A stretch of DNA of 64,000 bases from IMG/VR virus record IMGVR_UViG_3300043418_000114, positions 186,001 through 250,000 of that record; one strand, given 5' to 3'. Shown here piece after piece: positions 36,274-55,342 of the stretch. The position numbers and the translations under genes were made by a program. Positions within the stretch are counted from its first letter, which is position 1; each line of letters begins with the position of its first letter. The notes under the pieces are model-generated. The model saw nothing but the letters and a program-made list of their open reading frames with translations, was not told the origin of the DNA and searched no databases.

Positions 36274-37695
36274 TTACGACAAGTCGTAACGTGTCTTCAT
36301 CACTGTCTTCAACATGACGGCTTCTGGTGTGAAGTCTTCCAAGTCGTTAGACAATACAGAAGTTGCTAGTGCTGGGCTAAAGCCTGACACTAGTGCAGTA
36401 CCACTCTTATCGAATGACACTGGTGTGTTACCGTAACTTGCGTTCAAGTTCCAGAAGACAACTTTTGGAAGTGCGTAGCCTGCGGCTTCGTACTTACGTG
36501 CGATCATTTGCATCGCGGTGTCGTCATGCTTAACACATTGGTTAAATTGCATGTCTGAGAAGATAACAAGAGTTTCAGGCATTTCTGCTTGTGGAACACT
36601 GTTTTCTGTCGCAGTCTTCAGGATCTTTTCAAACGCCTTGTGAAGGTCTGTACTCATATCCCAGTTAGACTTGACCATTTGGTCAATCTTTTGGTTGATG
36701 TTACCCTTTAGGTGCATCAATTCTGGCTTGCTTGAGAAGGTCAAGAAGGTATCTTTGAACTTACCCTTGTTCTTATCAGCAAAGTACAAACCTAGGCTAA
36801 CAGCAACTTCCATGCAAGACAGGTTGCTCTTAGAGCCATGACCACCTGCTGGACAAGACATTGAACCAGAAACGTCAACCAGAGGAAGAACGTTTGCATC
36901 GCCAACGTAGTTAGGCATTGCTTCCCATTGCTTTTGGATCAAGTCAGTTTCAGTCTTGTTAAACTGCATCCAACCACCAATACGACCCTTCAGTACGTCA
37001 TATGGGAACACTGCGCCTGCGTTAACCTTAACACCAGCTTCGCCCTTAACGAGCTTAGTTACATATTCAGCGTATGTAGTACCATGACGGCCAAACGCTT
37101 TCTTGTAACGTGCATGTGCCACTGAAGGAACATGTGAGTAGTTGATGTTATCCCAATTTTGGGCACACATTTGTGTTTCAACAACATTAGTAAGGCCGAC
37201 TAGGCTCTTACGATATTGTTTAGGGGTCATTCCGAAGAATTGACGGATTTCACGTGCTACTTCACCTTTACGTGGAGTCCACTTAGCCGCAAGACCGTTA
37301 CCTGCACGTAGTGCATCGCCGAGCATAGTGTATGCCTTGGCCTTCACAGGCTGAGTCTTAAACACTAGCAAGTCGTCGTAACGACCCAATTCTGGAATCT
37401 TAGCCATCAAACGCATTGCGTCTTCTGGGTTAGTCTTTTCCAAGTGAACGAGGATGTCTCGGAAGACTTGACGTTCACCTGAACCACCACGTGCATCACG
37501 TGCCCATTGAGCGATACGCAATGCAAGATCAGAGTTCTCTACATAAGCCGCTGTGAAAGCCGGCACGATGTTTTTACCACGGCTTGCACCGATGTTGTAA
37601 AACAAATCAACACATGCGTTAGCACTTGATTTGCGAGCCTTCATACCATTGGTGGTACGAGTTGATTGATTCTTAACTGCTTCTGCGAATTGCAT
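36274..37695 (-). CDS. DUF2828-like TROVE/Ro-related protein with C-terminal vWA (MIDAS) domain
   Basis: 'ARD.RGG.GER', 'G.YDDL', 'AAKW.PR', DVSGS MIDAS, 'SDMQF', 'VFWNL', 'VSGFS'. Confidence 0.8.
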   Translation of the reverse strand: MQFAEAVKNQSTRTTNGMKARKSSANACVDLFYNIGASRGKNIVPAFTAAYVENSDLALRIAQWARDARGGSGERQVFRDILVHLEKTNPEDAMRLMAKIPELGRYDDLLVFKTQPVKAKAYTMLGDALRAGNGLAAKWTPRKGEVAREIRQFFGMTPKQYRKSLVGLTNVVETQMCAQNWDNINYSHVPSVAHARYKKAFGRHGTTYAEYVTKLVKGEAGVKVNAGAVFPYDVLKGRIGGWMQFNKTETDLIQKQWEAMPNYVGDANVLPLVDVSGSMSCPAGGHGSKSNLSCMEVAVSLGLYFADKNKGKFKDTFLTFSSKPELMHLKGNINQKIDQMVKSNWDMSTDLHKAFEKILKTATENSVPQAEMPETLVIFSDMQFNQCVKHDDTAMQMIARKYEAAGYALPKVVFWNLNASYGNTPVSFDKSGTALVSGFSPALATSVLSNDLEDFTPEAVMLKTVMKTRYDLS

Positions 37696-39694: not shown

Positions 39695-39770
39695 TGGAGC
39701 GGGAAAAGGGGCTCGAACCCTCGACCTATACCTTGGCAAGGTATCGCTCTACCAACTGAGCTATTCCCGC
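39695..39770 (-). tRNA. tRNA-Gly(GCC)
   Basis: Cloverleaf; loop TTGCCAA; CCA. Confidence 0.92.
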
Positions 39771-39776
39771 ATGTTC

Positions 39777-39851
39777 TGGTACATCGACACGGTTTCGAAC
39801 CGCGGACCCTCTCCGTGTAAAGGAGACGCTCTACCCCTGAGCTATCGATGC
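39777..39851 (-). tRNA. tRNA-Val(TAC)
   Basis: Loop TTTACAC; CCA. Confidence 0.9.
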
Positions 39852-39862
39852 ATATATTCTAT

Positions 39863-40218
39863 TTAGCCACCCTGTTGGCTATCTTTAATTTCTGTTCCCC
39901 AGTCAATTTCCTTCTTGTCATCAGACATATCAGGTAATGGAGGTGGAACGTAACGTTCACGCTTTGGCTTTTCACCAAAGATTTTGTCCATGTTCTCACC
40001 GAATTCTGTAGGACTAATACTAAATGGACGAGGACGAGAACCCTTGCTCATTACTTAGATTCCTTACGTGAACCCTTCTGACGGGCATCGCTCTCTGCGA
40101 TTTGTGTAAAGCTACGCAAGAATGCGCCACGCTTGTGTGAATCTAGAATTGTTGCAGATGCTATCTTAACTAGCTTGCCTAGCTTCACTGCTTTTGGATC
40201 ATAACCTCTACATGTCAT
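39863..40218 (-). other. Two small hypothetical CDS (39863-40051; 40051-40218)
   Basis: SD sites; TAATG coupling. Confidence 0.55.
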
Positions 40219-40241
40219 ACTATTTTCCTTTTATGTTAAAT

Positions 40242-40319
40242 TGGTCTCGGTAGTAGGATTCGAACCTACGACCCTCTGCTCCCAAAGCAGATGCGCTAAC
40301 CAGACTGCGCTACACCGAG
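40242..40319 (-). tRNA. tRNA-Pro(TGG)
   Basis: Loop TTTGGGA; CCA. Confidence 0.92.
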
Positions 40320-40325
40320 ATTGTT

Positions 40326-40398
40326 TGGATGCGGGTGACAGATTCGAACTGCCGATGCTCCGAGCTTATGAGACTGGAGTGGTGACCACCCTACCCGC
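40326..40398 (-). tRNA. Atypical initiator-like tRNA-Met(CAT)
   Basis: C1:A72 mismatch; loop CTCATAA; shrunken D arm; CCA. Confidence 0.7.
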
Positions 40399-40410
40399 GT
40401 AAATCGTTTT

Positions 40411-40485
40411 TGGTGCGTGATAGAGGGATCGAACCTCTGACCTTCTCAATGTCACTGAGATATTCTACCGCTGAAATAATCACGC
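40411..40485 (-). tRNA. tRNA-Val(GAC)
   Basis: Loop GTGACAT; CCA. Confidence 0.85.
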
Positions 40486-40490
40486 ATTTT

Positions 40491-40610
40491 AACAGGTTCT
40501 CTTTTTTCGTGCTACCACTACACCAACGCGAAGACCAACTCGCGCCTGGGATTCGAACCCAGCCCCTCTTTTTTACAGAAAGATTATTAAGATTGCTGAA
40601 AAGAACCTAA
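40491..40610 (-). ncRNA. CAGCA-scaffold RNA copy 4, enclosing a circularly permuted tRNA-Tyr(GTA)-like domain
   Basis: TAGGTTCT-TTT-CAGCA, anticodon arm TCTTT-CTGTAAA-AAAGA, T arm, closed acceptor, D arm, AGAACCTG. Confidence 0.85.
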
Positions 40611-40620
40611 TGGTCAAACT

Positions 40621-40696
40621 TGGTGGAGGTGACAGGACTCGAACCCGCTACCTATTGCTTGCAAAGCAACCGCTCTCCCAGGTGAGCTACACCCCC
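40621..40696 (-). tRNA. tRNA-Ala(TGC)
   Basis: G3:U70; loop TTTGCAA; CCA. Confidence 0.92.
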
Positions 40697-40771
40697 GAAA
40701 TTTGTTACACACTACTTATCTCATTATACGCCATGTGTAAGGGCGAGGCTTCTAACTCTTTCGAGTTTTGT

Positions 40772-40848
40772 TGGTGCGGATGGTGGGACTCGAACCCACA
40801 AAATTTGGCTTCTAAGACCAACACGTATACCAATTCCATCACATCCGC
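40772..40848 (-). tRNA. tRNA-Leu(TAG), short variable loop
   Basis: Loop CTTAGAA; CCA. Confidence 0.88.
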
Positions 40849-40859
40849 GTAATTCTATT

Positions 40860-40937
40860 TATACTGAAACACACTAACCAAGTCTCCTAACCTGTATCAA
40901 CTGCCCCACTTGTGCAGTTATCAATGCGTTTTAGTAT
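40860..40937 (-). repeat. Long-stem element (family 2)
   Basis: TATACTAAAACGCATTG...TAGTGTGTTTCAGTATA. Confidence 0.65.
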
Positions 40938-41118
40938 AAAGGCTATCAGAGGCTTGCCATCGCCCTTAGGTTATACTGATATTACTCGTTGAAATATACC
41001 GAAGTATAGAGTTGGATTCAACAAGACCCTACTACTCACCTAAACTCATGTAGTCTGTAACGCATCATCATGAAGGGTCCAGCGACCTCTATCGTTACAG
41101 CATCTGGTTACATTCTTT

Positions 41119-41200
41119 CTATACTGAAACACACTGACTCTCCAGTATTTCTACTTTCGCCGAGTTTGACCGCGTAGTCGTGCAATGTGTTTTAGTATAG
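41119..41200 (-). repeat. Long-stem element (family 2)
   Basis: CTATACTAAAACACATTG...CAGTGTGTTTCAGTATAG. Confidence 0.65.
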
Positions 41201-42079
41201 TGGAGCACTGAGAATACATGCTTACCGAGTAACACCTCAGACATTATTACAATCCTTGCGAGACTGCTTTCTTCTGACTTCCACTGCAACCTCTTGCGAG
41301 TATCACAGTCTGTTACCAACATCGCCGTTTTAAGTCAGGCATTAGACTTGACGCTGTATGCTATTCTACGCTTTCTATCCCGTTGACCTTTAGAGCCATT
41401 CACTACCGCTAAGTAGTTACGAAACTTCCTGCATAAACAGATTTCACCTTGCGAGTTACGTCTGACTGGATTATCTTGCGACTCCAGTATTAGATGCTTT
41501 TCACATACAACCGAGACAGACTTTGCTTTTTTAATCGATAGAAGGGATCGAACCTTCAGCCGACTGCTTGAAAATGCAGTTGATCTACCATTGATCTATA
41601 TCAACCTACTGTGATGTGCTGTCTCAGTTGCTTCATAATCTTTTGGACTACAAAATACAACACGCCACGTACCTTTTGTCTCGCGGACTACTCAGTCGTC
41701 TTTCACGATTAATGTCGGGTCTCGGCTTTCGCGTACCTCCATCAACCATTCAAACTGCATTACAACTCTTAGATGCGACTCCTCGAATCATAACACTACC
41801 CTTTCTCATACCAATTAACTGGACTGGTTTTGTCGTGAGGTCAGCACCACCTGTTACTCTCTAATGACTTGCGTTACCCTCGATATTATCTCAGGCGCTT
41901 AAGCCACTAATTCTTTCCACAACTTCCAGCGTCATTGTTATCACCACCGGTCTTATCAGTGATGAAACCCTCGCGGGTTTGAGCAGGCTTGCTTAGATGA
42001 ACTATTTCTAGCGCGGGTCTGTAGGAGACTACCGCTTTGGGCCGATCACTCGGCTTATTCTAATGAGGCTAAGCCCCCA
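41201..42079 (-). ncRNA. GOLLD-like giant structured RNA with an embedded tRNA-Glu-like domain
   Basis: About 880 nt without a credible ORF; many GCAA/GNRA-capped stems; ends GCATGTATTCTCAGTGCTCCA; tRNA-cluster context; cloverleaf at 41533-41605. Confidence 0.65.
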
Positions 42080-42083
42080 TAAA

Positions 42084-42200
42084 TTCTTATACTCGCATAC
42101 ACTTGCAATATTGAAATTGCCTACCGGAAGGATATCTCACATCCAGCTGTGTCCGCTCACATCCGTATGGCCTATACGTTTATGTATGCGAGTATAAGAA
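42084..42200 (-). repeat. Long-stem element (family 2-like)
   Basis: 17-bp perfect stem TTCTTATACTCGCATAC / GTATGCGAGTATAAGAA. Confidence 0.6.
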
Positions 42201-42204
42201 CTAC

Positions 42205-42309
42205 TTTCTTAACATTGTTGAACATACTAGTGCATTTCCAAATTATGCTACTCCTCATCAGGGATGGAATCGAACCAACATCCCTAATACATTCAACAAT
42301 GCTAAGAAA
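42205..42309 (-). ncRNA. YrlA-topology tRNA-mimic RNA
   Basis: About 25-bp stem enclosing T loop TTCGATT, a short closed acceptor hairpin, then D arm TAGCATAATTTGGAAATGC. Confidence 0.6.
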
Positions 42310-42326
42310 ATTCTTAGCAATAATTT

Positions 42327-42394
42327 TTTAAAGAACATCACTGATTTCTCAGTGTCAATACAAGTATTGTATAAGGTTTTTAATTCACTGTCAA
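42327..42394 (-). promoter_or_regulatory. sigma70 promoter with boxB-like hairpin and boxA-like element
   Basis: TTGACA-N17-TACAAT; CACTGA-GAAA-TCAGTG; TGTTCTTTAAAA. Confidence 0.7.
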
Positions 42395-42424
42395 CAACTT
42401 TTTTAAGATTGTTAACCATTTTAT

Positions 42425-42500
42425 TGGAGCGGGAGGCGGGAGTCGAACCCGTCTATTTCAGTTTGGAAGACTAACGTGTAACCACAAACACTTCACCCGC
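42425..42500 (-). tRNA. tRNA-Gly(TCC)
   Basis: Loop CTTCCAA; U73; CCA. Confidence 0.88.
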
Positions 42501-42512
42501 ATAAATAACTTT

Positions 42513-42865
42513 ATGCATATCTATGACGCTATCACAAACTCTGGATTACACATCCACTTGTCCATGAGCGCCGATAATACATTTTACATTCTAGTATACG
42601 ACATTGATAACTTCATGTTAACTATGAAATTTTTCAACAATGTAGATACTGCAATGCAATTTATCCATTCACTATGAGTAGCCCAACAGATTACGAAATC
42701 TTATATAGATTAAACACTAGTCCATATGCAGAGACTAAGAGTTGGGTACTGCCTAATACATTCAAAGCAATGTTCTCAAATGAGAACTTACCTGAATTTG
42801 TTATTGATGAACTATTAAAGAAACAGACGTTTAAATTAGACGATCAGTTTCCTCAATACAAATAA
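42513..42865 (+). other. Two small coupled CDS (42513-42677, 42674-42865) antisense to the tRNA array
   Basis: ATAAATA upstream; ATGA overlap. Confidence 0.5.
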
Positions 42866-42867
42866 TC

Positions 42868-42943
42868 TGGCATCCCGGGAGGGATTTGAACCCCCAACTT
42901 ACGGTTTTGGAGACCGTTGCTCTGCCAATTGAACTACCGAGAT
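42868..42943 (-). tRNA. tRNA-Trp(CCA)
   Basis: Loop CTCCAAA; G73; CCA. Confidence 0.9.
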
Positions 42944-42949
42944 ATATAA

Positions 42950-43010
42950 AACAGGATGCTTATTTTTCAATTAAAAGTTGAATTATAAGATGTTGCTGGA
43001 CGCATCCTAA
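42950..43010 (-). ncRNA. CAGCA-scaffold RNA copy 5, with a bare Lys(TTT) anticodon stem-loop
   Basis: TAGGATGC-GTC-CAGCA...TTCAA-CTTTTAA-TTGAA...GCATCCTG. Confidence 0.85.
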
Positions 43011-43014
43011 AACT

Positions 43015-43104
43015 TGGCGGAAACGGTGAGATTCGAACTCACGGACCCTTTGAAAGATCGCCGGTTTTCAAGACCGGAGCCATAGACCACTCGACCACGT
43101 TTCC
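43015..43104 (-). tRNA. tRNA-Ser(TGA)
   Basis: Loop CTTGAAA; long V arm; G73; CCA. Confidence 0.92.
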
Positions 43105-43117
43105 ATTAAAATATTTA

Positions 43118-43202
43118 TACCATATGTAAACACACTAGCGTTTTTCACTAAACTACAACTTGACTGGACTTGACCAGTGACTCTATTGTGCTTGCATATG
43201 GT
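43118..43202 (-). repeat. Long-stem element (family 2)
   Basis: ACCATATGCAAGCACAATAG...CTAGTGTGTTTACATATGGT. Confidence 0.65.
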
Positions 43203-43315
43203 GACAGTTTAGTCCGATAACTGCCAAGAGTTGTGGTGATCCGGCACACCTTTTATGTATAAGTTGACTACAAGAGGCTTATACACTAGGGCCTTCACGT
43301 TGCCCTATTTTTTAA

Positions 43316-43442
43316 TACCATATAGAAACACACTGTCGTTTCTCTTTCCAGTCTAGACAACCTCGCTTACGAAGCACGATTATATCACAGGATTACGCAT
43401 CCTGCTCGTCACTGTACTCAAGCAATGTGTTTTTATATGGTA
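43316..43442 (-). repeat. Long-stem element (family 2)
   Basis: TACCATATAAAAACACATTG...CAGTGTGTTTCTATATGGTA; overlaps the CCA of tRNA-Lys. Confidence 0.65.
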
Positions 43443-43512
43443 GGGGCACAGGGAATCGAACCCTGATAGACCGGTTAAAAGCCGGATATTCTAGCCGTTG
43501 AATTATACCCCC
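43438..43512 (-). tRNA. tRNA-Lys(TTT)
   Basis: Loop CTTTTAA; CCA. Confidence 0.9.
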
Positions 43513-43515
43513 ATA

Positions 43516-43590
43516 TGGTCCCAGTGCTGAGATTCGAACTCAGTTCTCTCGGCTTAAGAGGCCGGACTTCACCTTCAAAGTTTCTCTGGG
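43516..43590 (-). tRNA. tRNA-Lys(CTT)
   Basis: Loop CTCTTAA; CCA; imperfect acceptor stem. Confidence 0.75.
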
Positions 43591-43689
43591 ATGGATCGTA
43601 AGAAATTTTCTTTTACGTGCCATCTGAGACCATACGGGGGTCAAAGATGACACTATCGTTTACCTGAACGTTTCATGTCATTTACCTTT

Positions 43690-44046
43690 TTAAGATTTAA
43701 GTGCTTTTAAAATATTATCCCAAGATTCAGTTGGATTATGACCTTGATCTAGCAAGGCAACATAAGTCTTAACTGCATCTTCTGGAATCTTGAAATAGAT
43801 GTTTGCGTAGGTGCAGTCGAATGAATCATCTTCATCACGAACGTACCATGGATGACTTGACATTTCATCAAATACATCTTCATAGTCTTCACGATTGCCA
43901 CCACCATTACGTGTGTGAACAACAATGTGACCATCTTCTACATAAACATCACGAAAGCGACCGAAGTCACCTTTTGTTTTATCTAACAGACTCAGGAGTT
44001 GATCCGAGTTAGGGTTAGTGCCAAACATCATGTTATACAAACTCAT
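43690..44046 (-). CDS. Hypothetical phage protein
   Basis: AAGGAG SD; 'GRFRD...HTRNGGGNREDY...DD.FDCTYA'. Confidence 0.65.
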   Translation of the reverse strand: MSLYNMMFGTNPNSDQLLSLLDKTKGDFGRFRDVYVEDGHIVVHTRNGGGNREDYEDVFDEMSSHPWYVRDEDDSFDCTYANIYFKIPEDAVKTYVALLDQGHNPTESWDNILKALKS

Positions 44047-44144
44047 TTCATTCTCCTTTGTTAATTTGTGGAAGTTCCGATAGCACCCATCGTCACTTAC
44101 AACCGTTGAGTAGCCTTGCATCAAAACAGTGCTACTATTTGCTC

Positions 44145-44219
44145 TGGAGGACAGGATAGGAATCAAACCTACCTAGAACGGATTTGCAATCCGCCACATA
44201 ATCGCTCTGTCACCTGTCC
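44145..44219 (-). tRNA. tRNA-Cys(GCA)
   Basis: Loop TTGCAAA; U73; CCA. Confidence 0.82.
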
Positions 44220-44228
44220 ATATTTTGT

Positions 44229-44316
44229 TGGCGGAGCATGTAGGAATCGAACCTACTCACCTCTTTCGAAATGATGGATTAGCAATCCATTGCCTTAACC
44301 GGTCGGCCAATGCTCC
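44229..44316 (-). tRNA. tRNA-Ser(GCT)
   Basis: Loop TTGCTAA; long V arm; CCA. Confidence 0.9.
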
Positions 44317-44331
44317 GTAAAATATCTGATT

Positions 44332-44500
44332 AAAAATCATAAAATAGTGTATTCAGCTGGCAGACTGCAACAAGATACTATCCTCTAATATATTAGTATC
44401 ACAGTGATATTAAGTTCCGGACCCTAATATCACCAAAGTCTGGCAAATAAGATATATAAATTCAAAGTTTATTAAATGAATACACTAATTTATGATTTTT
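44332..44500 (-). repeat. Long inverted-repeat-bounded element
   Basis: AAAAATCATAAATTAGTGTATTCA...TGAATACACTATTTTATGATTTTT. Confidence 0.6.
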
Positions 44501-44576
44501 GGTGGGCCCAACAGGACTCGAACCTGTGGCCAAGGAATTATGAGTTCCCTGCTCTAACCAACTGAGCTATAGGCCC
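44500..44576 (-). tRNA. tRNA(CAT), Ile2-like or Met
   Basis: GGGCCTA acceptor; loop CTCATAA; CCA. Confidence 0.85.
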
Positions 44577-44586
44577 ATAATCTAAA

Positions 44587-44766
44587 ACCATATTATAATA
44601 CACTCCCAATGCATGTCAAGCACTGTAACTTCATGGTACATCTTGAACCACAGTTTCGAACCTGTGAAATGTAGCACTATCTAGTATCAACTCTTTCGAA
44701 TTCAAAACATACTAGACCCGGCAAGCTGGGGCCTCTATATATGACAAGAGTATACTATAATATGGT
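44587..44766 (-). repeat. Long-stem element (family 2)
   Basis: ACCATATTATAGTATACTC...GAGTGTATTATAATATGGT; overlaps the CCA of tRNA-Leu. Confidence 0.6.
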
Positions 44767-44849
44767 GCGGGTGGCCGGAATCGAACCGGCACGGTGTCTC
44801 CACCGACGGATTTTAAGTCCGTTACGTCTACCTATTTCATCACACCCGC
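44763..44849 (-). tRNA. tRNA-Leu(TAA)
   Basis: Loop CTTAAAA; long V arm; CCA. Confidence 0.92.
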
Positions 44850-44856
44850 ATATTAC

Positions 44857-44933
44857 TGGCGCCTCGTAGGGGACTCGAACCCCTGGCCTCTTGCGTGACA
44901 GGCAAGCGATCTAACCAACTGAGCTAACGAAGC
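44857..44933 (-). tRNA. tRNA-Asp(GTC)
   Basis: Loop CTGTCAC; G73; CCA. Confidence 0.9.
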
Positions 44934-44938
44934 GTAAA

Positions 44939-45090
44939 TGGTGGGCTATCGCGGATTCAAACCACGCAACAACTCTATGTTGTAGAGTTAGGATTTCCAA
45001 TCACTCTAAAGCCTATAAATTCATCACCGTTGACGTTTTACCATTGAAAGACACGGTGCCATCTGTCTCAGTCGCATTACCTATCACCCC
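44939..45090 (-). ncRNA. About 150-nt RNA with a tRNA-like 3' end
   Basis: T-like arm CGTGG-TTTGAAT-CCGCG, then ATAGCCC-A-CCA; probable 5' partner GGGTGAT. Confidence 0.45.
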
Positions 45091-45139
45091 ATGCTCGGAT
45101 TCATAGATAGGCATTCTACTGATAATTCAATGTTTATCT

Positions 45140-45226
45140 TGGTGGATGCGGCTGGAGTTGAACCAGCAGTGCCTTTCGGGCGGCGGGTTTACAGCCCGCT
45201 GGGGTTACCAATTTTCCTACACATCC
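45140..45226 (-). tRNA. tRNA-Tyr(GTA)
   Basis: Loop CTGTAAA; V arm; CCA. Confidence 0.9.
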
Positions 45227-45227
45227 A

Positions 45228-45656
45228 TTATTTGTTTTTGCCACACCAAGTGTCAGTCTGTGAATGACAATTGGGACAGAGTAATCTTAAGTTTTTAAAC
45301 TTGTGATTGTGATTATCGCCGTCTATGTGATCTAAATGTAGAGAAATTTCTTTTCCCATCCATTCTTCTAATCCACACGACGAGCATTTGTTATCTAATA
45401 TTTTTTCTTTTAACAAACGCTTTTTCAGTTTTAGTGTTTGATATGTAGGATGCAATCCTTCTAGAATTTCATTCAACTCTATCTTCTTTGCACCACCACC
45501 TATCTTAAAATCTAAACCTAATCTTTTTGCTCTACGCCAAACTGTAACATCTGGCACATTAAAATAATGTGCTAACTTGCTCAAGACTGGCGTAATGTTA
45601 TACTGTTCTATCAATTCAGTATCTGTAAACTTTTCTGTACTATGTTTTTGTTTCAT
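45228..45656 (-). CDS. HNH endonuclease
   Basis: CxxC...LHLDHIDGD..N....NLRLLCPNCH. Confidence 0.88.
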   Translation of the reverse strand: MKQKHSTEKFTDTELIEQYNITPVLSKLAHYFNVPDVTVWRRAKRLGLDFKIGGGAKKIELNEILEGLHPTYQTLKLKKRLLKEKILDNKCSSCGLEEWMGKEISLHLDHIDGDNHNHKFKNLRLLCPNCHSQTDTWCGKNK

Positions 45657-45699
45657 ACAGTATTTATGAAAAGTTAGATATGAAATCTAAAAATAAACT

Positions 45700-45776
45700 T
45701 GGTGCCCCCAGCGGGACTCGAACCCGCAGAATCTTGATTTTGAGTCAAGCACGTATACCAATTCCATCACAAGGGC
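45700..45776 (-). tRNA. tRNA-Leu(CAA), short variable loop
   Basis: Loop CTCAAAA; CCA. Confidence 0.85.
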
Positions 45777-45904
45777 AAAAAGAAACATACTAGCGATCTA
45801 CTGTTGTTGTGATTGAACACAGGACTTAGTATAAGTCGTCCCAACTCCGCATCTTTTTAACACAAGTCCTGCGGTTGCTTGTGAGCTAATATATTTCAAA
45901 AACT

Positions 45905-45980
45905 TGGTACTCCGTATGGGAATCGAACCCATCTTACCAACGTGAAAGGCTGGTGTCCTAAACCGATAGACGAACGGAGC
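45905..45980 (-). tRNA. tRNA-Glu(TTC)
   Basis: Loop CTTTCAC; CCA. Confidence 0.9.
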
Positions 45981-45988
45981 ATAGTTAT

Positions 45989-46091
45989 TCACTATATGTA
46001 AACACAAAAGCAATACTAACCGGGCGGTCGATATCGGCGTTAGCCAAGTCACTTACCCAGACTTTCAAACTAATGTGCTTACATATAGTGA
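45989..46091 (-). repeat. Long-stem element (family 2)
   Basis: TCACTATATGTAAGCACA...TGTGTTTACATATAGTGA. Confidence 0.65.
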
Positions 46092-46123
46092 CTGCTTCAC
46101 AGCAGTGTATATGTTGGTTGTTT

Positions 46124-46192
46124 TTTTAAAGAACAGTGCTGATTTCTCAGCGTCAATACATGTATTGTATAACATGTTTGAATCATTGTCAA
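46124..46192 (-). promoter_or_regulatory. sigma70 promoter with boxB-like and boxA-like element
   Basis: TTGACA-N17-TACAAT; GCTGA-GAAA-TCAGC; TGTTCTTTAAAA. Confidence 0.7.
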
Positions 46193-46331
46193 ACTATTTT
46201 TAAGTATTTTAGATGGATTCGAACCATCGTTTCACTGGCGATTCCCACCATACAGTTACTATGACTTCACTGTGTGGGCCCTTGCGTCCTAAGCCCCTAG
46301 ACGATAAGACACTTAGAAATAGTCTGACAAA
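46185..46331 (-). ncRNA. tRNA-like RNA with extended acceptor stem and expanded anticodon domain
   Basis: About 25-bp terminal stem, D arm, T arm GATGG-TTCGAAT-CCATC; no CCA. Confidence 0.55.
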
Positions 46332-46400
46332 TTGTTAAAGAACAGTGATTGATTTCTCAATCGATACACGTATTGTATGCGAGTTTTTATTTAGTGTCAA
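46332..46400 (-). promoter_or_regulatory. sigma70 promoter with boxB-like and boxA-like element
   Basis: TTGACA-N17-TACAAT; GATTGA-GAAA-TCAATC; TGTTCTTTAACAA. Confidence 0.72.
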
Positions 46401-46445
46401 GCGTTTCCTAAAATATTTTGATAAATAGTTAAAAGGAACCCCAAA

Positions 46446-46943
46446 ATGAAAAAGTACGCAACATTAAGCATTGATAGCTCAACTCTAGCAACTGAAATCA
46501 TGACATATTTGAAATCTTCAATCGATGTTGAGGATAACGATCATCATATCCATGCATTTCACGTGTTAAATTTGACTGATCTTGCCAACACTACACTCAA
46601 CACTACGTTTACCGGATTAACCGCAAAATTCGTGGGGCATTTGACAATCAATGGCAGTCAAATGTTTAATCATTGCTATGATTCTGCATTTATGCTTATT
46701 CCATTGGAAGATTGTGAATCAACAGTGGTTAAGATTTTTGACGTTGCTCCTGGCGCAGTATTTAATCCAACTGACTCTTGCTACATGGACCAAGACTGCA
46801 CACTAGCAAATGCATTGCCACTTACATCACCTATTGTGATTAGTGCGAATACAACTCACACCATTGAAACAACCAACTTCACAAAACTAGCAGATGTGTT
46901 AATGATCATCTTCAATGAAGATGTATCAACGTTACTAGCTTAA
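46446..46943 (+). CDS. Hypothetical (possibly cupin-fold) protein
   Basis: ATAAATA and AAGGA upstream. Confidence 0.6.
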   Translation: MKKYATLSIDSSTLATEIMTYLKSSIDVEDNDHHIHAFHVLNLTDLANTTLNTTFTGLTAKFVGHLTINGSQMFNHCYDSAFMLIPLEDCESTVVKIFDVAPGAVFNPTDSCYMDQDCTLANALPLTSPIVISANTTHTIETTNFTKLADVLMIIFNEDVSTLLA

Positions 46944-46944
46944 G

Positions 46945-47019
46945 TGGTCCGGCGTAGTGGAATCGAACCACTATAATCACTTTAGAAGAATGATGTCCTA
47001 TCCGTTGAACGAACGCCAG
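46945..47019 (-). tRNA. tRNA-Arg(TCT)
   Basis: Loop CTTCTAA; CCA. Confidence 0.88.
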
Positions 47020-47086
47020 ATAACTGATAGCATATCACAATAAAAAGAAAAAGTCAAGAGATTTTTAGTTTCTTGACTTTTTTGTT

Positions 47087-47162
47087 TGGCTCCCCTACGT
47101 GGGCTCGAACCACGGACATTTTGATTAACAGTCAAACGCTCTACCAACTGAGCTATAGGAGA
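47087..47162 (-). tRNA. tRNA-Asn(GTT)
   Basis: Loop CTGTTAA; G73; CCA. Confidence 0.92.
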
Positions 47163-47169
47163 ATAAATG

Positions 47170-47244
47170 TGGTGCCCTCGAGGTGAATCGAACACCTGAT
47201 CCTCCGCTTACAAGGCGGATGCATTACCACTCTGCTACAAGGGC
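47170..47244 (-). tRNA. tRNA-Thr(TGT)
   Basis: Loop CTTGTAA; CCA. Confidence 0.9.
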
Positions 47245-47310
47245 ATAATTTTATTTATAGTGAGTATATCACAGCAAAACTTTTTTGTCAAGTCTTGCCA
47301 TGATATCTTC

Positions 47311-47871
47311 CTACGAAAGCAAGATTCTAGAATGCTTTGGCACACCTGCCATCAAGTATTCCATTTGGTCTGCAAGAATTGTTCGTTGTTGCAGAATCAT
47401 GTTTTCATAGTGGTTAGGTTCATAAGGAACATAAAGTAGTTCCATACGTGCTTCTTTCAAAGACTTATGACCCTTCTTAGAGTTACATTCCTTACATGCA
47501 GTAACTACGTTCATCCAAGTGTTGTCGCCGCCATGGTACCGAGGTACAATGTGGTCACGGCTTAGATTGTGATAGTTAGGGAAATGTCCACCACAGTATG
47601 CACAAACATACCGGTCACGACCAAACAATGTCTTGTTAGTCAATGCAACATGTGCGTGACGATGTGGGTTATAACCATGACCCTTGATAGCAATAATAGA
47701 AGGAGATTCTAGGTAGCTTAGTGATCCGTCACGTTGTACGCCACCACGATACTTCGCAACAATTTCACCCATAGACCATGCTACGGAGTCAGTTGCGTGA
47801 TATGCAATTGCGTCATCGTTTGAGATCCATTGCCGGGGAACTCCTGAAATATCTAGTGCTAGAACAGCCAT
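47311..47871 (-). CDS. HNH endonuclease (McrA-like)
   Basis: RD..VCAYCG...DHIVP...GG..TW.NVVTACKECN. Confidence 0.88.
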   Translation of the reverse strand: MAVLALDISGVPRQWISNDDAIAYHATDSVAWSMGEIVAKYRGGVQRDGSLSYLESPSIIAIKGHGYNPHRHAHVALTNKTLFGRDRYVCAYCGGHFPNYHNLSRDHIVPRYHGGDNTWMNVVTACKECNSKKGHKSLKEARMELLYVPYEPNHYENMILQQRTILADQMEYLMAGVPKHSRILLS

Positions 47872-47916
47872 GCTTTTCTCCTTTGTGTTACTGTCTACAT
47901 TTATTTAATGTTCCTT

Positions 47917-47991
47917 TGGAGGGTCGTACAAGATTCGAACTTGTGACTGCTGGTTTCGAAGACCAGAACTCTTCCACTGAGCTAACGACCC
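47917..47991 (-). tRNA. tRNA-Arg(TCG)
   Basis: Loop CTTCGAA; CCA. Confidence 0.88.
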
Positions 47992-48032
47992 ATGTTAATG
48001 ATTATATGACAAACACCATTATTTGTCAAACT

Positions 48033-48108
48033 TGGTGGCCTCGGGCGGGATCGAACCACCGACACATGGATTTTCAATCCACTGCTCTACCATCTGAGCT
48101 ACGAGGCC
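48033..48108 (-). tRNA. tRNA-Phe(GAA)
   Basis: Loop TTGAAAA; CCA. Confidence 0.92.
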
Positions 48109-48109
48109 A

Positions 48110-48283
48110 TTATTTTTGTTCTGGTATCTTACGCAAGCTATCTAGCTTCACTAGACAATCACGTTGAGTACCCATTCTGAATACGCGCAGATAATCTACG
48201 CCATCAATCTTTTGAATGTCCTTCATGTTTTTACAGAAGAACTTTTCCTTGTTTCTGACATTTTCGAAATAAGTTGTTTTCAT
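48110..48283 (-). CDS. Small hypothetical protein
   Basis: AAGGAG SD; 57 aa. Confidence 0.55.
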   Translation of the reverse strand: MKTTYFENVRNKEKFFCKNMKDIQKIDGVDYLRVFRMGTQRDCLVKLDSLRKIPEQK

Positions 48284-48297
48284 ATCATTCTCCTTCT

Positions 48298-48374
48298 TGG
48301 TACCCCAGATGGGACTCGAACCCACAGATACAACGACCTCAACGTTGCGTGTCTACCAATTCCACCACCGGGGC
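48298..48374 (-). tRNA. tRNA-Leu(GAG), short variable loop
   Basis: Loop TTGAGGT; CCA. Confidence 0.85.
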
Positions 48375-48482
48375 ATATATTAGTGCCAGGTTGTCCTTGT
48401 CCCTAGCGTTGCGGCAAGTTGTTTTAGGTTTTGCTTTTACTATGGATCCGCTTTACCTTAAACCACAAAAGGATTTAAACAC

Positions 48483-48572
48483 TGGCAGAGAGTAAGGGAT
48501 TCGAACCCTTGTGCCGCGCTAGCGACCATCACCTTTCCAAGATGCGCCCTTAAGCCTCTCGGGCAACTCTCT
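48483..48572 (-). tRNA. tRNA-Ser(GGA)
   Basis: Loop TTGGAAA; long V arm; CCA. Confidence 0.85.
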
Positions 48573-48577
48573 ATATT

Positions 48578-48676
48578 TGGTGCCTCTGGCAGGACTCGAA
48601 CCTGCACACTGTGGCTTATCTAGCCACTGCTTTGGGGAGGTATAAGCTCCCTTCTTTACCATTAAGCTACAGAGGC
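48578..48676 (-). tRNA. tRNA with TAT anticodon (Ile AUA) and about 29-nt variable region
   Basis: GGGAG-CTTATAC-CTCCC; V hairpin GTGGCT-AGATA-AGCCAC; A73; CCA. Confidence 0.75.
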
Positions 48677-48683
48677 ATTATCT

Positions 48684-48775
48684 TGGCGGAAAGCAGAGGA
48701 GTCGAACCCCATCCCCGTTAGGAGAACCCAGTTTTCAAGGCTGGTCGGCACACCAACGCGCCTGCATTACTTTCC
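48684..48775 (-). tRNA. 8/4-type tRNA-Ser(TGA)
   Basis: 8-bp acceptor GGAAAGTA/TGCTTTCC; 4-bp T stem; long V arm; G73; CCA. Confidence 0.7.
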
Positions 48776-48776
48776 T

Positions 48777-49781
48777 TTATTTTTTGACGCCACGGGATGG
48801 ATTGAGCAATTCATGTAGATGCTCAATATATCGGTGGACTTCTTGATACACTAATTTTAGGTATCGTCTACGAACCTGCACTTCTTGTGGGTTGCGCGGT
48901 TCGGCGAATCTATTGCTGATTCTATTGTTTATGTAAGAAATGATATCTTCACTTTCAATGCGAGGAATATCTTGTAGTCTTTCAACTTTATCTAAGCCAT
49001 TTGCTTTAATAACGTCTAATGCCATTTGATGTGCAAATGCGGCAATTTCTTGTGGACTAGCATAATACAAGTCGTAGTAACGATCTTTGTTCTTAGACTT
49101 TACAGCCTTTTGTGCGGCGCTGTAGAACTCACCCTTAGTTTTATCTAAGTAGCTACGATATTCAGTCTTGCCTAGTGGTCTATGTGCCTGTTGCTTGTGT
49201 TGAACTAAGTGTACTGCCTCGTGAACTACAATTGATACAATCTTGTCGATTGCACTGTCCATGTCTTTCAAAAGTACATTAAGAATTTCTCTGTCATTAG
49301 ATTTCAACATCTTGAACAAGAAACTCATGCCCTTTGTTCTATCGCCTGCCTCATAATTGTCATACAAATAAATGCTAAAACGATTCATGATTGTACGAGC
49401 AATTGCTGGCAAGTAAGCACGATTAATAACCATGTTAGAACCCTGTGCGTAACCGCCCATGCCCTTCATGGTACCAAATCTGAACTTAGATATTGCGTCT
49501 TTACCAAGGATCTTTTCCAAGGTAAGTTTCATTTGTTTGGTAATACCTTTTTCAATCTTTTCATTACCTTCACGTTGCATGAACTCACGTACATAACGAT
49601 CACTTAGGTTATCGTCGTTTAAGATTTCTTGCAAGTTTGGATTGTTCATGAATGACTTTTCCAATGCAGACACGCCATTAATAATGCCGTCTTTAACAGC
49701 CCTTGACAAGTCTTCTTCATACTTGGTCATACTTATGGCTTCATCGACCACTTCTTCATTAACAAATTCAAATATACGCAT
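48777..49781 (-). CDS. Hypothetical protein with HExxH motif
   Basis: HEAVH..Q...Y.ASPQEIAAFA; ATAAATA upstream. Confidence 0.65.
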   Translation of the reverse strand: MRIFEFVNEEVVDEAISMTKYEEDLSRAVKDGIINGVSALEKSFMNNPNLQEILNDDNLSDRYVREFMQREGNEKIEKGITKQMKLTLEKILGKDAISKFRFGTMKGMGGYAQGSNMVINRAYLPAIARTIMNRFSIYLYDNYEAGDRTKGMSFLFKMLKSNDREILNVLLKDMDSAIDKIVSIVVHEAVHLVQHKQQAHRPLGKTEYRSYLDKTKGEFYSAAQKAVKSKNKDRYYDLYYASPQEIAAFAHQMALDVIKANGLDKVERLQDIPRIESEDIISYINNRISNRFAEPRNPQEVQVRRRYLKLVYQEVHRYIEHLHELLNPSRGVKK

Positions 49782-49802
49782 AGTACATATATTTATCTTA
49801 TT

Positions 49803-49880
49803 TGGTGTGTCCTGTTGGAATCGAACCAACTTCTCCGATTTTTCAGACCGGCGCTGAATGACCACACTAGCTCAGGACAC
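49803..49880 (-). tRNA. tRNA-Phe(GAA), second copy
   Basis: Loop CTGAAAA; CCA. Confidence 0.85.
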
Positions 49881-49881
49881 A

Positions 49882-54882: not shown

Positions 54883-55342
54883 ACAAAAAACGCTATTCAT
54901 TAGTATACAGGACATAAGGCCGTCAGGAGGCGAAATGCAGTGTTCATCCTATGATACTAGTGAATAGCATCTTGCGATGCTATGCTAGAGTCAATGCTCT
55001 AGCCAGTTATTTGTACTCCCGGGTTCTCGCCCACGGTTTCATCCAACTGTCCGCCCGTTCAAAGTTTATTATAGTGTTCTTTCAGGACCTCGTTTCCTGG
55101 GCTTACGCTCTTATTCAACACTGTTAATCAGCATAGTTTACTAGCTTTTTCAAACTAGCTAACTTTTCCTGATCCTTTTTCGCTCTCTCATACTTGTTTC
55201 GCATGAGAATTCTAACTTGTTCTTTTGACAGAGTATGGTTCTTTAACCAGTTATCTTTGTCAGAAGAACTTAATCTTATTTCATCCTTCAATTTTTATCA
55301 ATCTTTCTTTTTGTTCTGTTGTATTTTTGCTACATTCAAAAC

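What the first reader, a model, noticed from the sequence alone, without database searches (positions are those of the whole stretch)
40860..46091. Second repeat family: 17-24 bp terminal stems enclosing unrelated 45-140 nt cargo
Elements at 40860, 41119, 43118, 43316, 44587 and 45989 share (ACC)ATAT..AA(A/G)CACA...TGTGTTT..ATAT(GGT) stems; related stems occur at 42084, 44332 and 54892. The interiors differ. Several begin within or right after the CCA of the upstream RNA. They may be RNase III-type processing stems that release small RNAs, or a second protein-binding scaffold (inference).
Basis: partly seen in the sequence, partly recalled or inferred. Interest (0 to 1): 0.6.

Follow-up and report, generated by a model that had tools for sequence, protein, structure and literature searches.

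The report
Invariant hairpins punctuating phage tRNA arrays
A jumbo phage from fresh water, and hundreds of uncultured relatives, place a hairpin RNA with an almost invariant 17-18 bp stem and a freely replaceable loop directly after certain tRNA genes and after the giant GOLLD RNA; no RNA library or paper I could search describes it, and it most likely marks where the long tRNA transcript is cut.

Summary
All six lie in the tRNA array on the tRNA (-) strand. The stems at 42084, 44332 and 54892 share the architecture but are not members.

The family is large. More than 230 distinct copies occur on IMG/VR phage contigs, in phages whose terminases are only 31-36% identical. Outside the unpaired position, 96% of non-Watson-Crick stem cells are G.U on the tRNA strand, so selection acts on RNA. 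An A opposite C is kept unpaired.

The stem starts inside the CCA of the upstream tRNA in one fixed register:
- tRNA-Lys(UUU): 63% are followed by a hairpin.
- tRNA-Gln(UUG): 22%.
- tRNA-Glu(UUC): 9%.
- All other tRNAs: 1.2%.

It often ends at base +1 of the next tRNA, and it follows GOLLD by 4-6 nt in 5 of 5 jumbo relatives.

Loops run from 4 to about 180 nt, are mostly unrelated, and show no excess folding.

My best reading is a cis-acting processing hairpin whose stem is the functional unit. Cleavage itself is untested. The nearby Ro60-like DUF2828 protein does not co-occur, so it is an unlikely partner.

The parts
43318..43440 (-). Family member E6, with the canonical stem CCAUAUAAAAACACAUU...AGUGUGUUUCUAUAUGG. 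Its first three bases are the CCA of tRNA-Lys(UUU). The loop is 87 nt.
   Evidence: R1 56.4 bits; tRNA-Lys(UUU) at 43438-43512; sequence.
41119..41200 (-). Family member E2, the hairpin that trails GOLLD. It starts 4 nt after the 3' end of the GOLLD model. The stem is CUAUACUAAAACACAUU...AGUGUGUUUCAGUAUAG.
   Evidence: R1 54.6 bits. The same arrangement occurs in L007, L008, L009 and L029, with compensatory changes in the proximal helix.
43120..43201 (-). Family member E5. It is preceded by ...GUCACCA and ends 15 nt upstream of tRNA-Ser(UGA). It has a C.A mismatch at the position that is usually unpaired.
   Evidence: R1 47.5 bits; sequence.
40859..40939 (-). Family member E1. It ends 10 nt upstream of tRNA-Leu(UAG).
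   Evidence: R1 46.9 bits. The - strand fold is -29.2 kcal/mol against -17.2 for the + strand.
45992..46088 (-). Family member E9. It is the first large element after a sigma70-like promoter and ends 11 nt upstream of tRNA-Glu(UUC). The position that is usually unpaired is a U-A pair here.
   Evidence: R1 35.0 bits; promoter at 46192-46164; fold -46.5 kcal/mol, z -8.8.
44588..44765 (-). Divergent family member E8. It starts in the CCA of tRNA-Leu(UAA) and ends 11 nt before tRNA-Met. The loop is 142 nt. A perfect TTGACA-16-TATAAT promoter lies in its 3' part.
   Evidence: R1 24.3 bits, E 2.5e-4, with filters off only; promoter at 44619-44592. The closest relative, L001, has no hairpin at this junction.
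43438..43512 (-). tRNA-Lys(UUU), whose 3' CCA forms the base of E6. This is the tRNA type most often followed by the hairpin across phages.
   Evidence: Of distinct tRNA-Lys(UUU) contexts, 70 of 111 are followed by a hairpin.
41205..41668 (-). GOLLD RNA (conserved 3' domain) with an embedded tRNA-like gene at 41532-41606. It is context for the family, because its 3' end abuts E2.
   Evidence: Rfam RF02032, 203.5 bits, full-length model match; ARAGORN.
42082..42202 (-). E3, an 18-20 bp perfect stem with an unrelated sequence. It shares the architecture but is not a family member. It lies between the YrlA-like RNA and the GOLLD 5' region.
   Evidence: z -7.1; no R1 match at E up to 10.
42203..42311 (-). 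E4, a 26-bp stem that encloses a T-arm followed by a D-arm (a YrlA-like, permuted tRNA-like module).
   Evidence: Rfam YrlA 32.3 bits (gathering score 69), E 7.9e-6 in a local search. The same module sits on the canonical stem in L068.
44330..44502 (-). E7, a 24-bp stem that starts at A76 of tRNA-Met and ends 16 nt before tRNA-Ser(GCU). The stem sequence is unrelated, so it is not a family member.
   Evidence: no R1 match. It is absent from the same junction in L001.
54885..54975 (-). E10, a 20-bp stem just upstream of tRNA-Gln(UUG). The stem sequence is unrelated, so it is not a family member.
   Evidence: no R1 match.

Best explanation
The six elements belong to a phage-specific family of inter-gene RNA hairpins in the polycistronic tRNA transcript. 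I read them as a cis-acting processing or 'punctuation' signal.

Shown:
- The helix has 17-18 bp: a 7-bp proximal part (CCAUAUA/UAUAUGG) that can covary, one unpaired position (usually A opposite C), and a 10-bp distal part (AAAC(A/G)CAUU-N / N-AGUGUGUUU). The first nine distal pairs are close to invariant and the tenth covaries freely.
- Selection acts on the transcribed tRNA strand.
- The helix begins in the CCA of the preceding stable RNA. In about a third of copies it ends at base +1 of the next tRNA.
- The loop is dispensable and freely replaced.

Inferred:
- After transcription the hairpin is removed by endonucleolytic cuts. RNase P at the next tRNA defines its 3' side.
- A cut at or near the CCA defines its 5' side. 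The most likely route is a staggered cut by a double-strand-specific enzyme of the RNase III type near the unpaired position, 4-5 nt after the CCA.
- That cut would leave a short trailer on the upstream tRNA or on GOLLD, which exonucleases can then trim.
- The excised top of the stem plus loop is a by-product that is occasionally co-opted, for example when it carries a tRNA-like or YrlA-like module.
- The near-invariance of the distal helix implies recognition by one conserved factor. That factor is probably a host enzyme, because no phage protein I tested co-occurs with the hairpin.
For: Family and significance: R1 hits only these six in the window, and none elsewhere in the 364-kb genome.

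Breadth:
- The exact 16-mer of the 3' arm occurs in at least 120 IMG/VR stretches, and 136 of 141 matches have the complementary arm upstream.
- The 5' arm scan gives a further 124 of 156.
- There are 230 distinct hairpins, 36-215 nt long.
- All 18 large records tested carry them.
- The terminase of the ~160-175 kb carriers is only 31-36% identical to this phage's.
- Among 596 Gb of prokaryote genomes only about 8 real copies occur, all on MAG or bin contigs of 1.5-14 kb.

RNA-level selection on the tRNA strand:
- With the 3' arm fixed, the other 15 positions give 1669 Watson-Crick, 155 G.U and only 6 mismatched cells.
- With the 5' arm fixed, the G/U-rich 3' arm changes at only 1-2% per position.
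- Pair 18 covaries freely (AU 23, CG 9, GC 9, GU 6, UG 4, UA 3).
- The proximal helix of the GOLLD-trailing copies shows compensatory changes.
- Only 1 of 139 copies has an antisense tRNA nearby.

Position:
- 100 of 139 copies start in the CCA of a tRNA in one fixed register, and 45 of 139 end within 1 nt of the next tRNA's first base.
- GOLLD 3' ends are followed at 4-6 nt in 5 of 5 phages.

The stem is the functional unit:
- Copies with 4-9 nt loops exist.
- There are 94 loop classes among 139 copies.
- Loop folding gives z -0.63 against -0.45 for control pieces, p 0.29.
- The window's loops have no homologues.

Transcription: the region is present in a freshwater metatranscriptome. The contig over E7/E8 has depth 206, against 28-48 over the neighbouring ORFs.
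Against: - No cleavage has been seen. The one read-mapping call returned assembled contigs only, which show neither ends nor strand. E5/E6 had almost no coverage in the best RNA run.
- RNase III is not known (my own knowledge) to need 10 bp of fixed sequence, so invariance across very distant phages is not explained by that enzyme alone.
- Most tRNA junctions in the same arrays are 2-10 nt long with no hairpin. The hairpin is therefore not needed for tRNA processing in general.
- The strong preference for tRNA-Lys(UUU), Gln(UUG) and Glu(UUC) has no explanation under a generic processing model.
- Identical loops occur behind different tRNAs. This suggests that at least some loops are under selection, or that the hairpins move as units.
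Confidence: 0.42

Rival explanations
1. The hairpins are stable trans-acting RNAs. tRNA-processing enzymes cut them out (RNase P on one side, a CCA-proximal cut on the other). The invariant stem is the binding site of a protein that is sequestered, recruited or inhibited, and the loop is a variable display module. The animal-virus analogue is the tRNA-linked pre-miRNA hairpins of MHV68, and the bacterial analogue is the Y RNAs.
For: - Sequence invariance of a helix with a conserved unpaired base is typical of a protein-binding site.
- Both ends often coincide with tRNA processing sites.
- Some loops carry T-arm or YrlA-like modules.
- Some loop classes are identical in different tRNA contexts.
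- The contig over E7/E8 is deeper than those over the neighbouring ORFs in an RNA library.
Against: - No partner was found: DUF2828 is in 2 of 18 records, the array ORF in 6 of 18, and the genome has no TROVE protein.
- Loops as a class are not more structured than controls.
- Loop-less copies exist.
- The window's loops have no homologues.
- The loops have no complementarity to the phage genome.
Confidence: 0.25
2. The hairpin is a dedicated 3' cap for the three tRNAs that carry 2-thiolated U34 (Lys UUU, Gln UUG, Glu UUC). It would control their maturation or supply, or protect or decoy them against host nucleases that attack these tRNAs.
For: Hairpins follow 102 of 323 distinct Lys(UUU), Gln(UUG) and Glu(UUC) contexts, against 25 of 2173 for all other tRNAs (odds ratio about 40). 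None of 39 Lys(CUU) contexts is followed. In the window E6 follows Lys(UUU), E9 precedes Glu(UUC) and E10 precedes Gln(UUG). That these tRNAs are frequent targets of anticodon nucleases is my own knowledge.
Against: - The copies are related by descent, so the counts are not independent events.
- The hairpin also follows GOLLD and other tRNAs.
- The base at the unpaired position does not track the upstream tRNA.
- No defence or counter-defence gene is linked to it.
Confidence: 0.12
3. The conserved arms act at DNA level. They would be recombination sites or the ends of a small mobile cassette that shuffles tRNA genes and loops between co-infecting phages. Analogues are integron attC sites and Correia or other MITE-type elements.
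For: - The same tRNA-Lys and the same stem occur with unrelated loops, and the same loop occurs behind different tRNAs or behind GOLLD.
- Filled and empty junctions differ between close relatives.
- Homing endonuclease genes sit inside the array.
- CC-ATAT...ATAT-GG could be read as a 4-bp target duplication.
Against: - The A/C-rich arm lies 5' on the tRNA strand in the copies examined; only 1 of 139 has an antisense tRNA nearby, and the model scores the tRNA strand 10-27 bits higher for all six window copies.
- Non-Watson-Crick cells are G.U on the transcribed strand, and the two arms evolve asymmetrically.
- The outer helix is kept by compensatory change rather than as a fixed duplication.
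- Interiors are not shared between copies within a genome, unlike MITEs.
- The empty junction in L001 shows no clean excision footprint.
- Single-stranded DNA hairpins are not excluded.
Confidence: 0.08
4. They are Y RNA-like partners of the Ro60-like DUF2828/vWA protein encoded at 36274-37695.
For: A DUF2828+DUF7788 protein with a weak vWA_Ro60 hit lies 2 kb beyond the array. Two YrlA-like RNAs lie inside the array. The architecture, a long stem plus a variable module, resembles Y RNAs (PMC4201824).
Against: - DUF2828 is found in only 2 of 18 hairpin-bearing records, and in 1 of 8 complete ones.
- It occurs in 709 cultured phages. None of the 14 records matched in a permissive search with a loop-less hairpin holds a full copy, though this is a weak test.
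- None of the six elements matches the Rfam YrlA model.
- The genome has no TROVE protein.
Confidence: 0.04

Closest known systems
RNase III processing hairpins between cistrons of phage T7 early RNA, and the rRNA processing stalks (own knowledge)
   Same: They are local or flanking helices of about two turns with an internal imperfection, placed between stable or functional RNAs in a polycistronic transcript. The T7 sites also resemble one another in sequence.
   Different: Here the helix starts inside a tRNA CCA, closes a loop of any size, and has a 10-bp part that is near-invariant across very distant phages. Cleavage by RNase III has not been shown.
Phage T4 stable RNAs rnaC and rnaD (species 1 and 2)
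   Same: They are small RNAs of unknown function inside the tRNA cluster. rnaD starts 1 nt after tRNA-Arg, and rnaC carries a T-arm near its 3' end, as some loops here do (PMC9697503).
   Different: They have no match to model R1, no shared invariant terminal stem, and occur as single copies.
tRNA-linked pre-miRNA hairpins of murine gammaherpesvirus 68, and tRNA external or internal spacers that act as RNAs in E. coli, such as 3'ETS-leuZ (own knowledge)
   Same: A hairpin or spacer RNA directly abuts a tRNA and is released by tRNA-processing enzymes.
   Different: The hosts, sequences and downstream machinery differ. No function has been shown here.
Bacterial Y RNAs (YrlA, Rfam RF02553) bound by Ro60/Rsr
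   Same: They have a long terminal stem with a conserved protein-binding segment plus a variable or tRNA-like module. One neighbouring hairpin (42203-42311) and one metagenomic family member (L068) carry the YrlA-type T-arm plus D-arm module.
   Different: The six elements do not match the model and lack the Ro-binding motif. The phage has no TROVE protein, and the Ro-like DUF2828 protein does not co-occur.
Correia (NEMIS) and ERIC miniature inverted-repeat elements (own knowledge)
   Same: They have terminal inverted repeats that fold into RNA hairpins within transcripts and are cut by RNase III or RNase E.
   Different: Those elements share their interiors, insert in both orientations and lie in bacterial chromosomes. 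Here the interiors are unrelated, the orientation is fixed, and the elements are confined to phage tRNA arrays.

Membership tests
This hairpin family (model R1, built here) | A significant match to a covariance model of the 17-bp stem with one unpaired position. | tested here: met
   The six window elements score 24-56 bits, with E from 2.5e-4 down to 1.7e-12. 42082-42202, 44330-44502 and 54885-54975 give no match, and 42212-42302 gives 7.7 bits (E 4.1).
This hairpin family (model R1, built here) | Lies on the tRNA strand and starts at or in an NCCA. | tested here: met
   All six are on the - strand. E6 and E8 start in a tRNA CCA. E5 follows ...CACCA and E2 follows ...UCCA one base upstream. 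E1 and E9 have only partial CCA mimics.
Y RNA / YrlA (RF02553) | A match to the Rfam model, including the Ro-binding helix. | tested here: not met
   None of the six matches at E <= 1 over 17 kb, nor at E <= 10 over 346 nt. Only 42206-42305 and 51909-52021 give sub-threshold hits of 32 and 31 bits against a gathering score of 69, and these come from the tRNA-like module.
Y RNA / YrlA (RF02553) | Encoded next to, and co-occurring with, a Ro60/Rsr (TROVE) protein. | tested here: not met
   The genome has no TROVE match. The remote relative DUF2828 is present here but in only 2 of 18 hairpin-bearing records.
RNase III processing site | A double helix of roughly 18-22 bp, often with an internal imperfection, between functional RNAs. 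| tested here: met
   There are 17-18 pairs with one unpaired position, placed between tRNAs or after GOLLD.
RNase III processing site | Staggered cleavage by RNase III in vivo or in vitro. | not testable with these tools
   Only assembled contigs of RNA libraries could be laid on the region. The phage has no RNase III gene and the host is unknown.
MITE / Correia-type mobile element | Copies share their interior, insert in either orientation and are flanked by a target duplication. | tested here: not met
   The interiors are unrelated. The A/C-rich arm lies 5' on the tRNA strand, and only 1 of 139 copies has an antisense tRNA nearby. The outer 'ATAT' is replaced by other complementary bases in E1, E2 and the GOLLD-trailing copies.
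Integron attC site | R and L boxes (RYYYAAC / GTTRRRY), extrahelical bases, and an IntI integrase. | tested here: inconclusive
   By inspection the arms lack the GTTRRRY core, although one unpaired base is conserved. I did not search for an integrase.
Phage promoter (DNA-level reading of TATAAAAA) | The motif is enriched upstream of genes. | tested here: not met
   TATAAAAA lies upstream of an ORF in 1 of 21 genome occurrences. The phage's own upstream motif is GATAAATA, at 30 of 43.

The most novel reading that the evidence does not exclude
The invariant hairpin is a recognition tag that a conserved, still unknown factor reads. It would give the three 2-thio-U34 tRNAs (Lys, Gln, Glu) and the GOLLD RNA a separate maturation, storage or protection route during infection. 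One example would be keeping a reserve of precursor that host anticodon nucleases cannot attack. The loop would be a free docking site that phages swap between themselves.
Probability: 0.15. Interest if true: 0.85.

Novelty: new variant of a known kind. Interest (0 to 1): 0.68.

Why it matters
Phage tRNA arrays are usually annotated as bare lists of tRNAs. This work shows that they carry a widespread, strongly selected RNA element with a clear grammar: it starts in a CCA, it has an invariant distal helix and one unpaired base, and its loop can be anything.

The element is absent from Rfam 15, and I found it in no paper the library could reach. It gives three things:
- A concrete handle on how giant polycistronic tRNA and GOLLD transcripts are cut up.
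- A marker that finds tRNA islands of a large group of uncultured phages, seen here in freshwater samples.
- A natural, insertion-tolerant RNA scaffold.

Its preference for the tRNAs that anticodon nucleases attack, and its fixed position after GOLLD, tie it to two open questions: why phages carry tRNAs, and what GOLLD does.

Tried and rejected
- **Ro60-like DUF2828 partner:** rejected for lack of co-occurrence (2 of 18 records).
- **Array ORF 43690-44166 as partner:** present only in the jumbo clade (6 of 18).
- **Obligatory link to GOLLD:** GOLLD is in only 5 of 18 carriers.
- **Phage-encoded RNase III, TROVE protein or CCA-adding enzyme:** none found in the genome.
- **Guide or antisense loops:** the best matches of the loops to the phage's own genome are 11-16 nt, no better than shuffles. 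The host is unknown, so host targets were not tested.
- **Loops as structured RNAs in general:** z -0.63 against -0.45 for control pieces, p 0.29.
- **The unpaired base spells the codon of the upstream tRNA:** rejected, since it is A after Lys and after Gln, and A or G after Glu.
- **Promoter reading of TATAAAAA:** not enriched upstream of genes.
- **Terminator reading:** no U-run follows the stems.
- **Homology to T4 rnaC and rnaD:** no R1 match.
- **Cultured phages:** no nucleotide relative of the region exists in the phage collection beyond tRNAs. A permissive search with a loop-less hairpin found only chance matches, though this is a weak test.
- **Read evidence:** Two fragment ends joined to adapter sequence were seen, at 41100 and 41209.
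- **Alignment A2:** it mixes both strands of the same loci, so I did not use it for pair counts.
- **One script timed out** and was replaced.

Full report
**Setting**

The window is bases 186001-250000 of a complete virus record of 364,247 bp with direct terminal repeats, that is, a jumbo phage. The best DNA and RNA holders of the region are freshwater metagenomes. Window 39695-54882 holds 45 tRNA genes, all on the - strand.

The same stretch holds several other features:
- A full-length GOLLD RNA (41205-41668, -, 203.5 bits) with an embedded tRNA-like gene.
- Two sub-threshold YrlA-like hits.
- Consensus sigma70-type promoters pointing along the - strand.
- Two HNH endonuclease genes.

No cultured phage in the collection resembles the region beyond single tRNAs.

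Yes.

I aligned 67 copies, five from the window and 62 from metagenomic phages. The two arms fell into columns 1-17 and 115-131, and I built a covariance model, R1, from that alignment.

- Over the whole genome R1 finds five elements and nothing else.
- With filters off over the array it adds 44588-44765 at 24.3 bits, E 2.5e-4.
- Each scores 10-27 bits higher on the - strand than on the + strand.
- The - strand folds are also the more stable for most of them.

The other long stems (42082-42202, 44330-44502, 54885-54975) are real. They have 18-24 pairs, with z from -4.7 to -7.1 on the - strand. They do not match R1.

The hairpin at 42203-42311 is different again. Its 26-bp stem encloses a T-arm followed by a D-arm and matches the Rfam YrlA model at 32 bits, E 7.9e-6 in a local search.

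**The family outside this genome**

A protein inside the array (43690-44166) led to 33 related IMG/VR loci. Several of them carry the same stem.

Of 141 matches, 136 have the complementary arm 20-280 nt upstream.
- A scan with the 5' arm gave 124 of 156.
- A core-based search of all loci held finds 230 distinct hairpins of 36-215 nt.
- All 18 large records tested contain R1 hits clustered in one place.
- The records fall into two groups. In the jumbo group the terminase is 55-67% identical to this phage's. In the group of about 157-176 kb it is only 31-36% identical. The stem is nevertheless almost letter-perfect in both.
- The same 16-mer scanned over 596 Gb of prokaryote genomes gave 80 hits, which is no more than I estimate chance would give. 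Only about eight are real hairpins, all on MAG or bin contigs of 1.5-14 kb.

The element is therefore specific to phages. No Rfam 15 family matches it, even at E 10 in a 346-nt search. My literature searches found no description of it.

**Anatomy**

On the tRNA strand the consensus is N-CCAUAUA-A-AAACACAUU-N ... N-AGUGUGUUU-C-UAUAUGG.

- Seventeen to eighteen pairs are supported.
- Position 8 is unpaired in 57 of 67 aligned copies. With the 3' arm fixed it is unpaired in 109 of 122 distinct copies, with A in 100 of them. With the 5' arm fixed it is C in 90 copies and U in 34.
- Pair 18 covaries freely.
- The proximal helix is replaced by other complementary sequences in E1, E2 and the GOLLD-trailing copies: UAUACU/AGUAUA, UAUUCU/AGAAUA and UAUAUG/CAUAUA.
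- The invariant core is therefore the distal helix plus the unpaired base.

**RNA or DNA?**

Three results point to RNA on the tRNA strand.

1. With the 3' arm held fixed, the other 15 positions of 122 distinct copies give 1669 Watson-Crick cells, 155 G.U cells and only 6 mismatches. On the opposite strand those 155 cells would be A.C mismatches.
2. The two arms evolve asymmetrically, as expected for an A/C-rich strand paired to a G/U-rich strand in RNA. The 5' arm tolerates A-to-G and C-to-U changes at 3-23% per position. The 3' arm changes at 1-2% per position.
3. Orientation relative to the tRNAs is constant. Only 1 of 139 copies has an antisense tRNA nearby.

A hairpin in single-stranded DNA of that same strand is not formally excluded.

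**Position**

- In 100 of 139 copies the stem starts in the CCA of a tRNA on the same strand, always in one register. In 45 of 139 the stem ends within one base of the first base of the next tRNA, so the GG that pairs with the upstream CC is G1G2 of that tRNA.
- Over 2496 distinct tRNA contexts, the hairpin follows tRNA-Lys(UUU) in 70 of 111, tRNA-Gln(UUG) in 22 of 102 and tRNA-Glu(UUC) in 10 of 110. It follows all other tRNAs in 25 of 2173, tRNA-Lys(CUU) in 0 of 39 and tRNA-Met in 1 of 208. These counts include relatives by descent, so they are not independent events.
- In the window, E6 follows tRNA-Lys(UUU) and E8 follows tRNA-Leu(UAA). E9 precedes tRNA-Glu(UUC), E1 precedes tRNA-Leu(UAG) and E5 precedes tRNA-Ser(UGA).
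- E2 follows the GOLLD 3' end by 4 nt. The same GOLLD-hairpin-tRNA order, with 4-6 nt between GOLLD and the hairpin, holds in L007, L008, L009 and L029.
- In one RNA library a fragment joined to adapter sequence ends at 41209, close to that GOLLD end.

**The loops**

- Among 139 copies there are 94 loop classes, ranging from a 4-nt GUGA loop to about 180 nt.
- The same tRNA-Lys and the same stem carry unrelated loops in different phages. Conversely, identical loops sit behind tRNA-Lys, tRNA-Gln, tRNA-Ala or tRNA-Arg.
- The GOLLD-trailing hairpin of L009 carries the loop found behind tRNA-Lys in L070, L071 and L149.
- In the closest relative, L001, the two hairpins after tRNA-Lys have the E5-type and E6-type stems in the opposite order, with other loops. 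The junctions that hold E7 and E8 here are only 24 and 12 nt long there.
- As a class, loops fold no better than control pieces (z -0.63 against -0.45, p 0.29).
- The loops of five of the six members (and of E3, E7 and E10) have no homologues in about 270 loci; E5 gives only weak 37-nt, 84% matches running into its 3' arm. None has complementarity to the phage genome beyond chance.
- A minority carry T-arm-like GGUUCGAAUCC hairpins or the YrlA-type module.

**What it most likely does**

The stem is the unit under selection. It sits exactly at the 3' boundary of stable RNAs and often at the 5' boundary of the next tRNA, and the loop is optional. The simplest reading is a cis-acting processing element.

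- RNase P at the next tRNA frees one side.
- A cut at or near the CCA frees the other side.
- A staggered double-strand cut next to the unpaired position would leave a 4-5 nt trailer on the upstream tRNA and a short leader on the downstream tRNA. Both are suitable for final trimming. This step is inference by analogy with phage T7 sites and rRNA stalks, from my own knowledge.

Several things remain unexplained:
- The near-invariance of 10 bp across distant phages.
- The choice of Lys, Gln and Glu tRNAs.
- The fact that most junctions do without a hairpin.

A specific reader of the stem is therefore likely, and it has not been found. DUF2828 (2 of 18 records), the array ORF (6 of 18) and GOLLD (5 of 18) do not track the hairpin. 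The phage has no RNase III, TROVE protein or CCA-adding enzyme.

**Rivals**

- A stable trans-acting hairpin that binds or titrates a protein is the main rival.
- A role tied specifically to the 2-thio-U34 tRNAs is the most novel reading that is still open.
- A DNA-level cassette or mobile element would account for the shuffling. It does not account for the strand-specific wobble pattern, the fixed orientation or the compensatory outer helix.
- The Y RNA/DUF2828 idea and the promoter idea fail their tests.

**Comparison with what is known**

- The closest analogues in function are the RNase III sites of phage T7 and the rRNA stalks.
- The closest in context are T4 rnaC and rnaD. rnaD starts 1 nt after tRNA-Arg, and rnaC has a T-arm. 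Their function is unknown (PMC9697503). Neither matches R1.
- The closest in logic are the tRNA-linked hairpins of MHV68 and the E. coli tRNA spacer RNAs.
- The closest in shape are the Y RNAs (PMC4201824).
- GOLLD's association with tRNA islands and embedded tRNAs is known (PMC12286853). The hairpin that trails it was not mentioned there.

**Verdict**

The element is real, widespread and under strong RNA-level selection, and as far as I could check it has not been described. Its mechanism is inferred, not shown.

Noticed in passing
window 41205-41668 (-), probably extending to about 42081: A full-length match to the GOLLD RNA 3' domain (203.5 bits), with an embedded tRNA-like gene at 41532-41606 that ARAGORN reads with a 4-base anticodon. 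The region has depths in the hundreds to tens of thousands in four freshwater RNA libraries.
   Followed up: partly
window 42394-40772 (-): An apparent single transcription unit. In order: a sigma70-like promoter (42394-42366), a small hairpin (42354-42339), the YrlA-like RNA (42311-42203), hairpin E3, GOLLD, E2, a 179-nt unknown stretch, E1, then tRNA-Leu(UAG). An RNA fragment end joined to adapter sequence lies at 41100, inside the unknown stretch.
   Followed up: partly
window 51909-52021 (-): A second YrlA-like, permuted tRNA-like RNA (T-arm first, then D-arm; 31 bits against a gathering score of 69). It matches 32 of the loci held; the best eight hits are 75-93% identical over about 120 nt.
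   Followed up: partly
window 44619-44592 (-): A perfect TTGACA-16-TATAAT promoter lies inside hairpin E8. Its -10 box is part of E8's 3' arm. It would start transcription just upstream of tRNA-Met (44576).
   Followed up: no
window 36274-37695 (-): A 473-aa protein with DUF2828 and DUF7788 domains and a weak Ro60 vWA hit (PHROG name 'RNA-binding protein'). Relatives occur in 709 cultured phages. It does not co-occur with the hairpin family.
   Followed up: yes
window 45228-45656 (-) and 47311-47871 (-): Two HNH endonuclease genes lie inside the tRNA array. They are possible drivers of the shuffling seen between related phages.
   Followed up: no
window 46138-46200, 46330-46400 and 42339-42394 (-): A repeated module of a TTGACA-17-TACAAT promoter followed by a small hairpin (CACUGAGAAAUCAGUG type) and a U-rich run.
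   Followed up: no
whole genome G000: The 8-mer GATAAATA lies upstream of ORFs in 30 of its 43 genome occurrences, a 24-fold enrichment. It is probably the phage's own (late-type) promoter motif.
   Followed up: no
window 43202-43317 (-): The 116-nt spacer between E6 and E5 ends in ...GUCACCA and has a 74%-identical counterpart in locus L276. It may be another small RNA with a CCA-like end.
   Followed up: no
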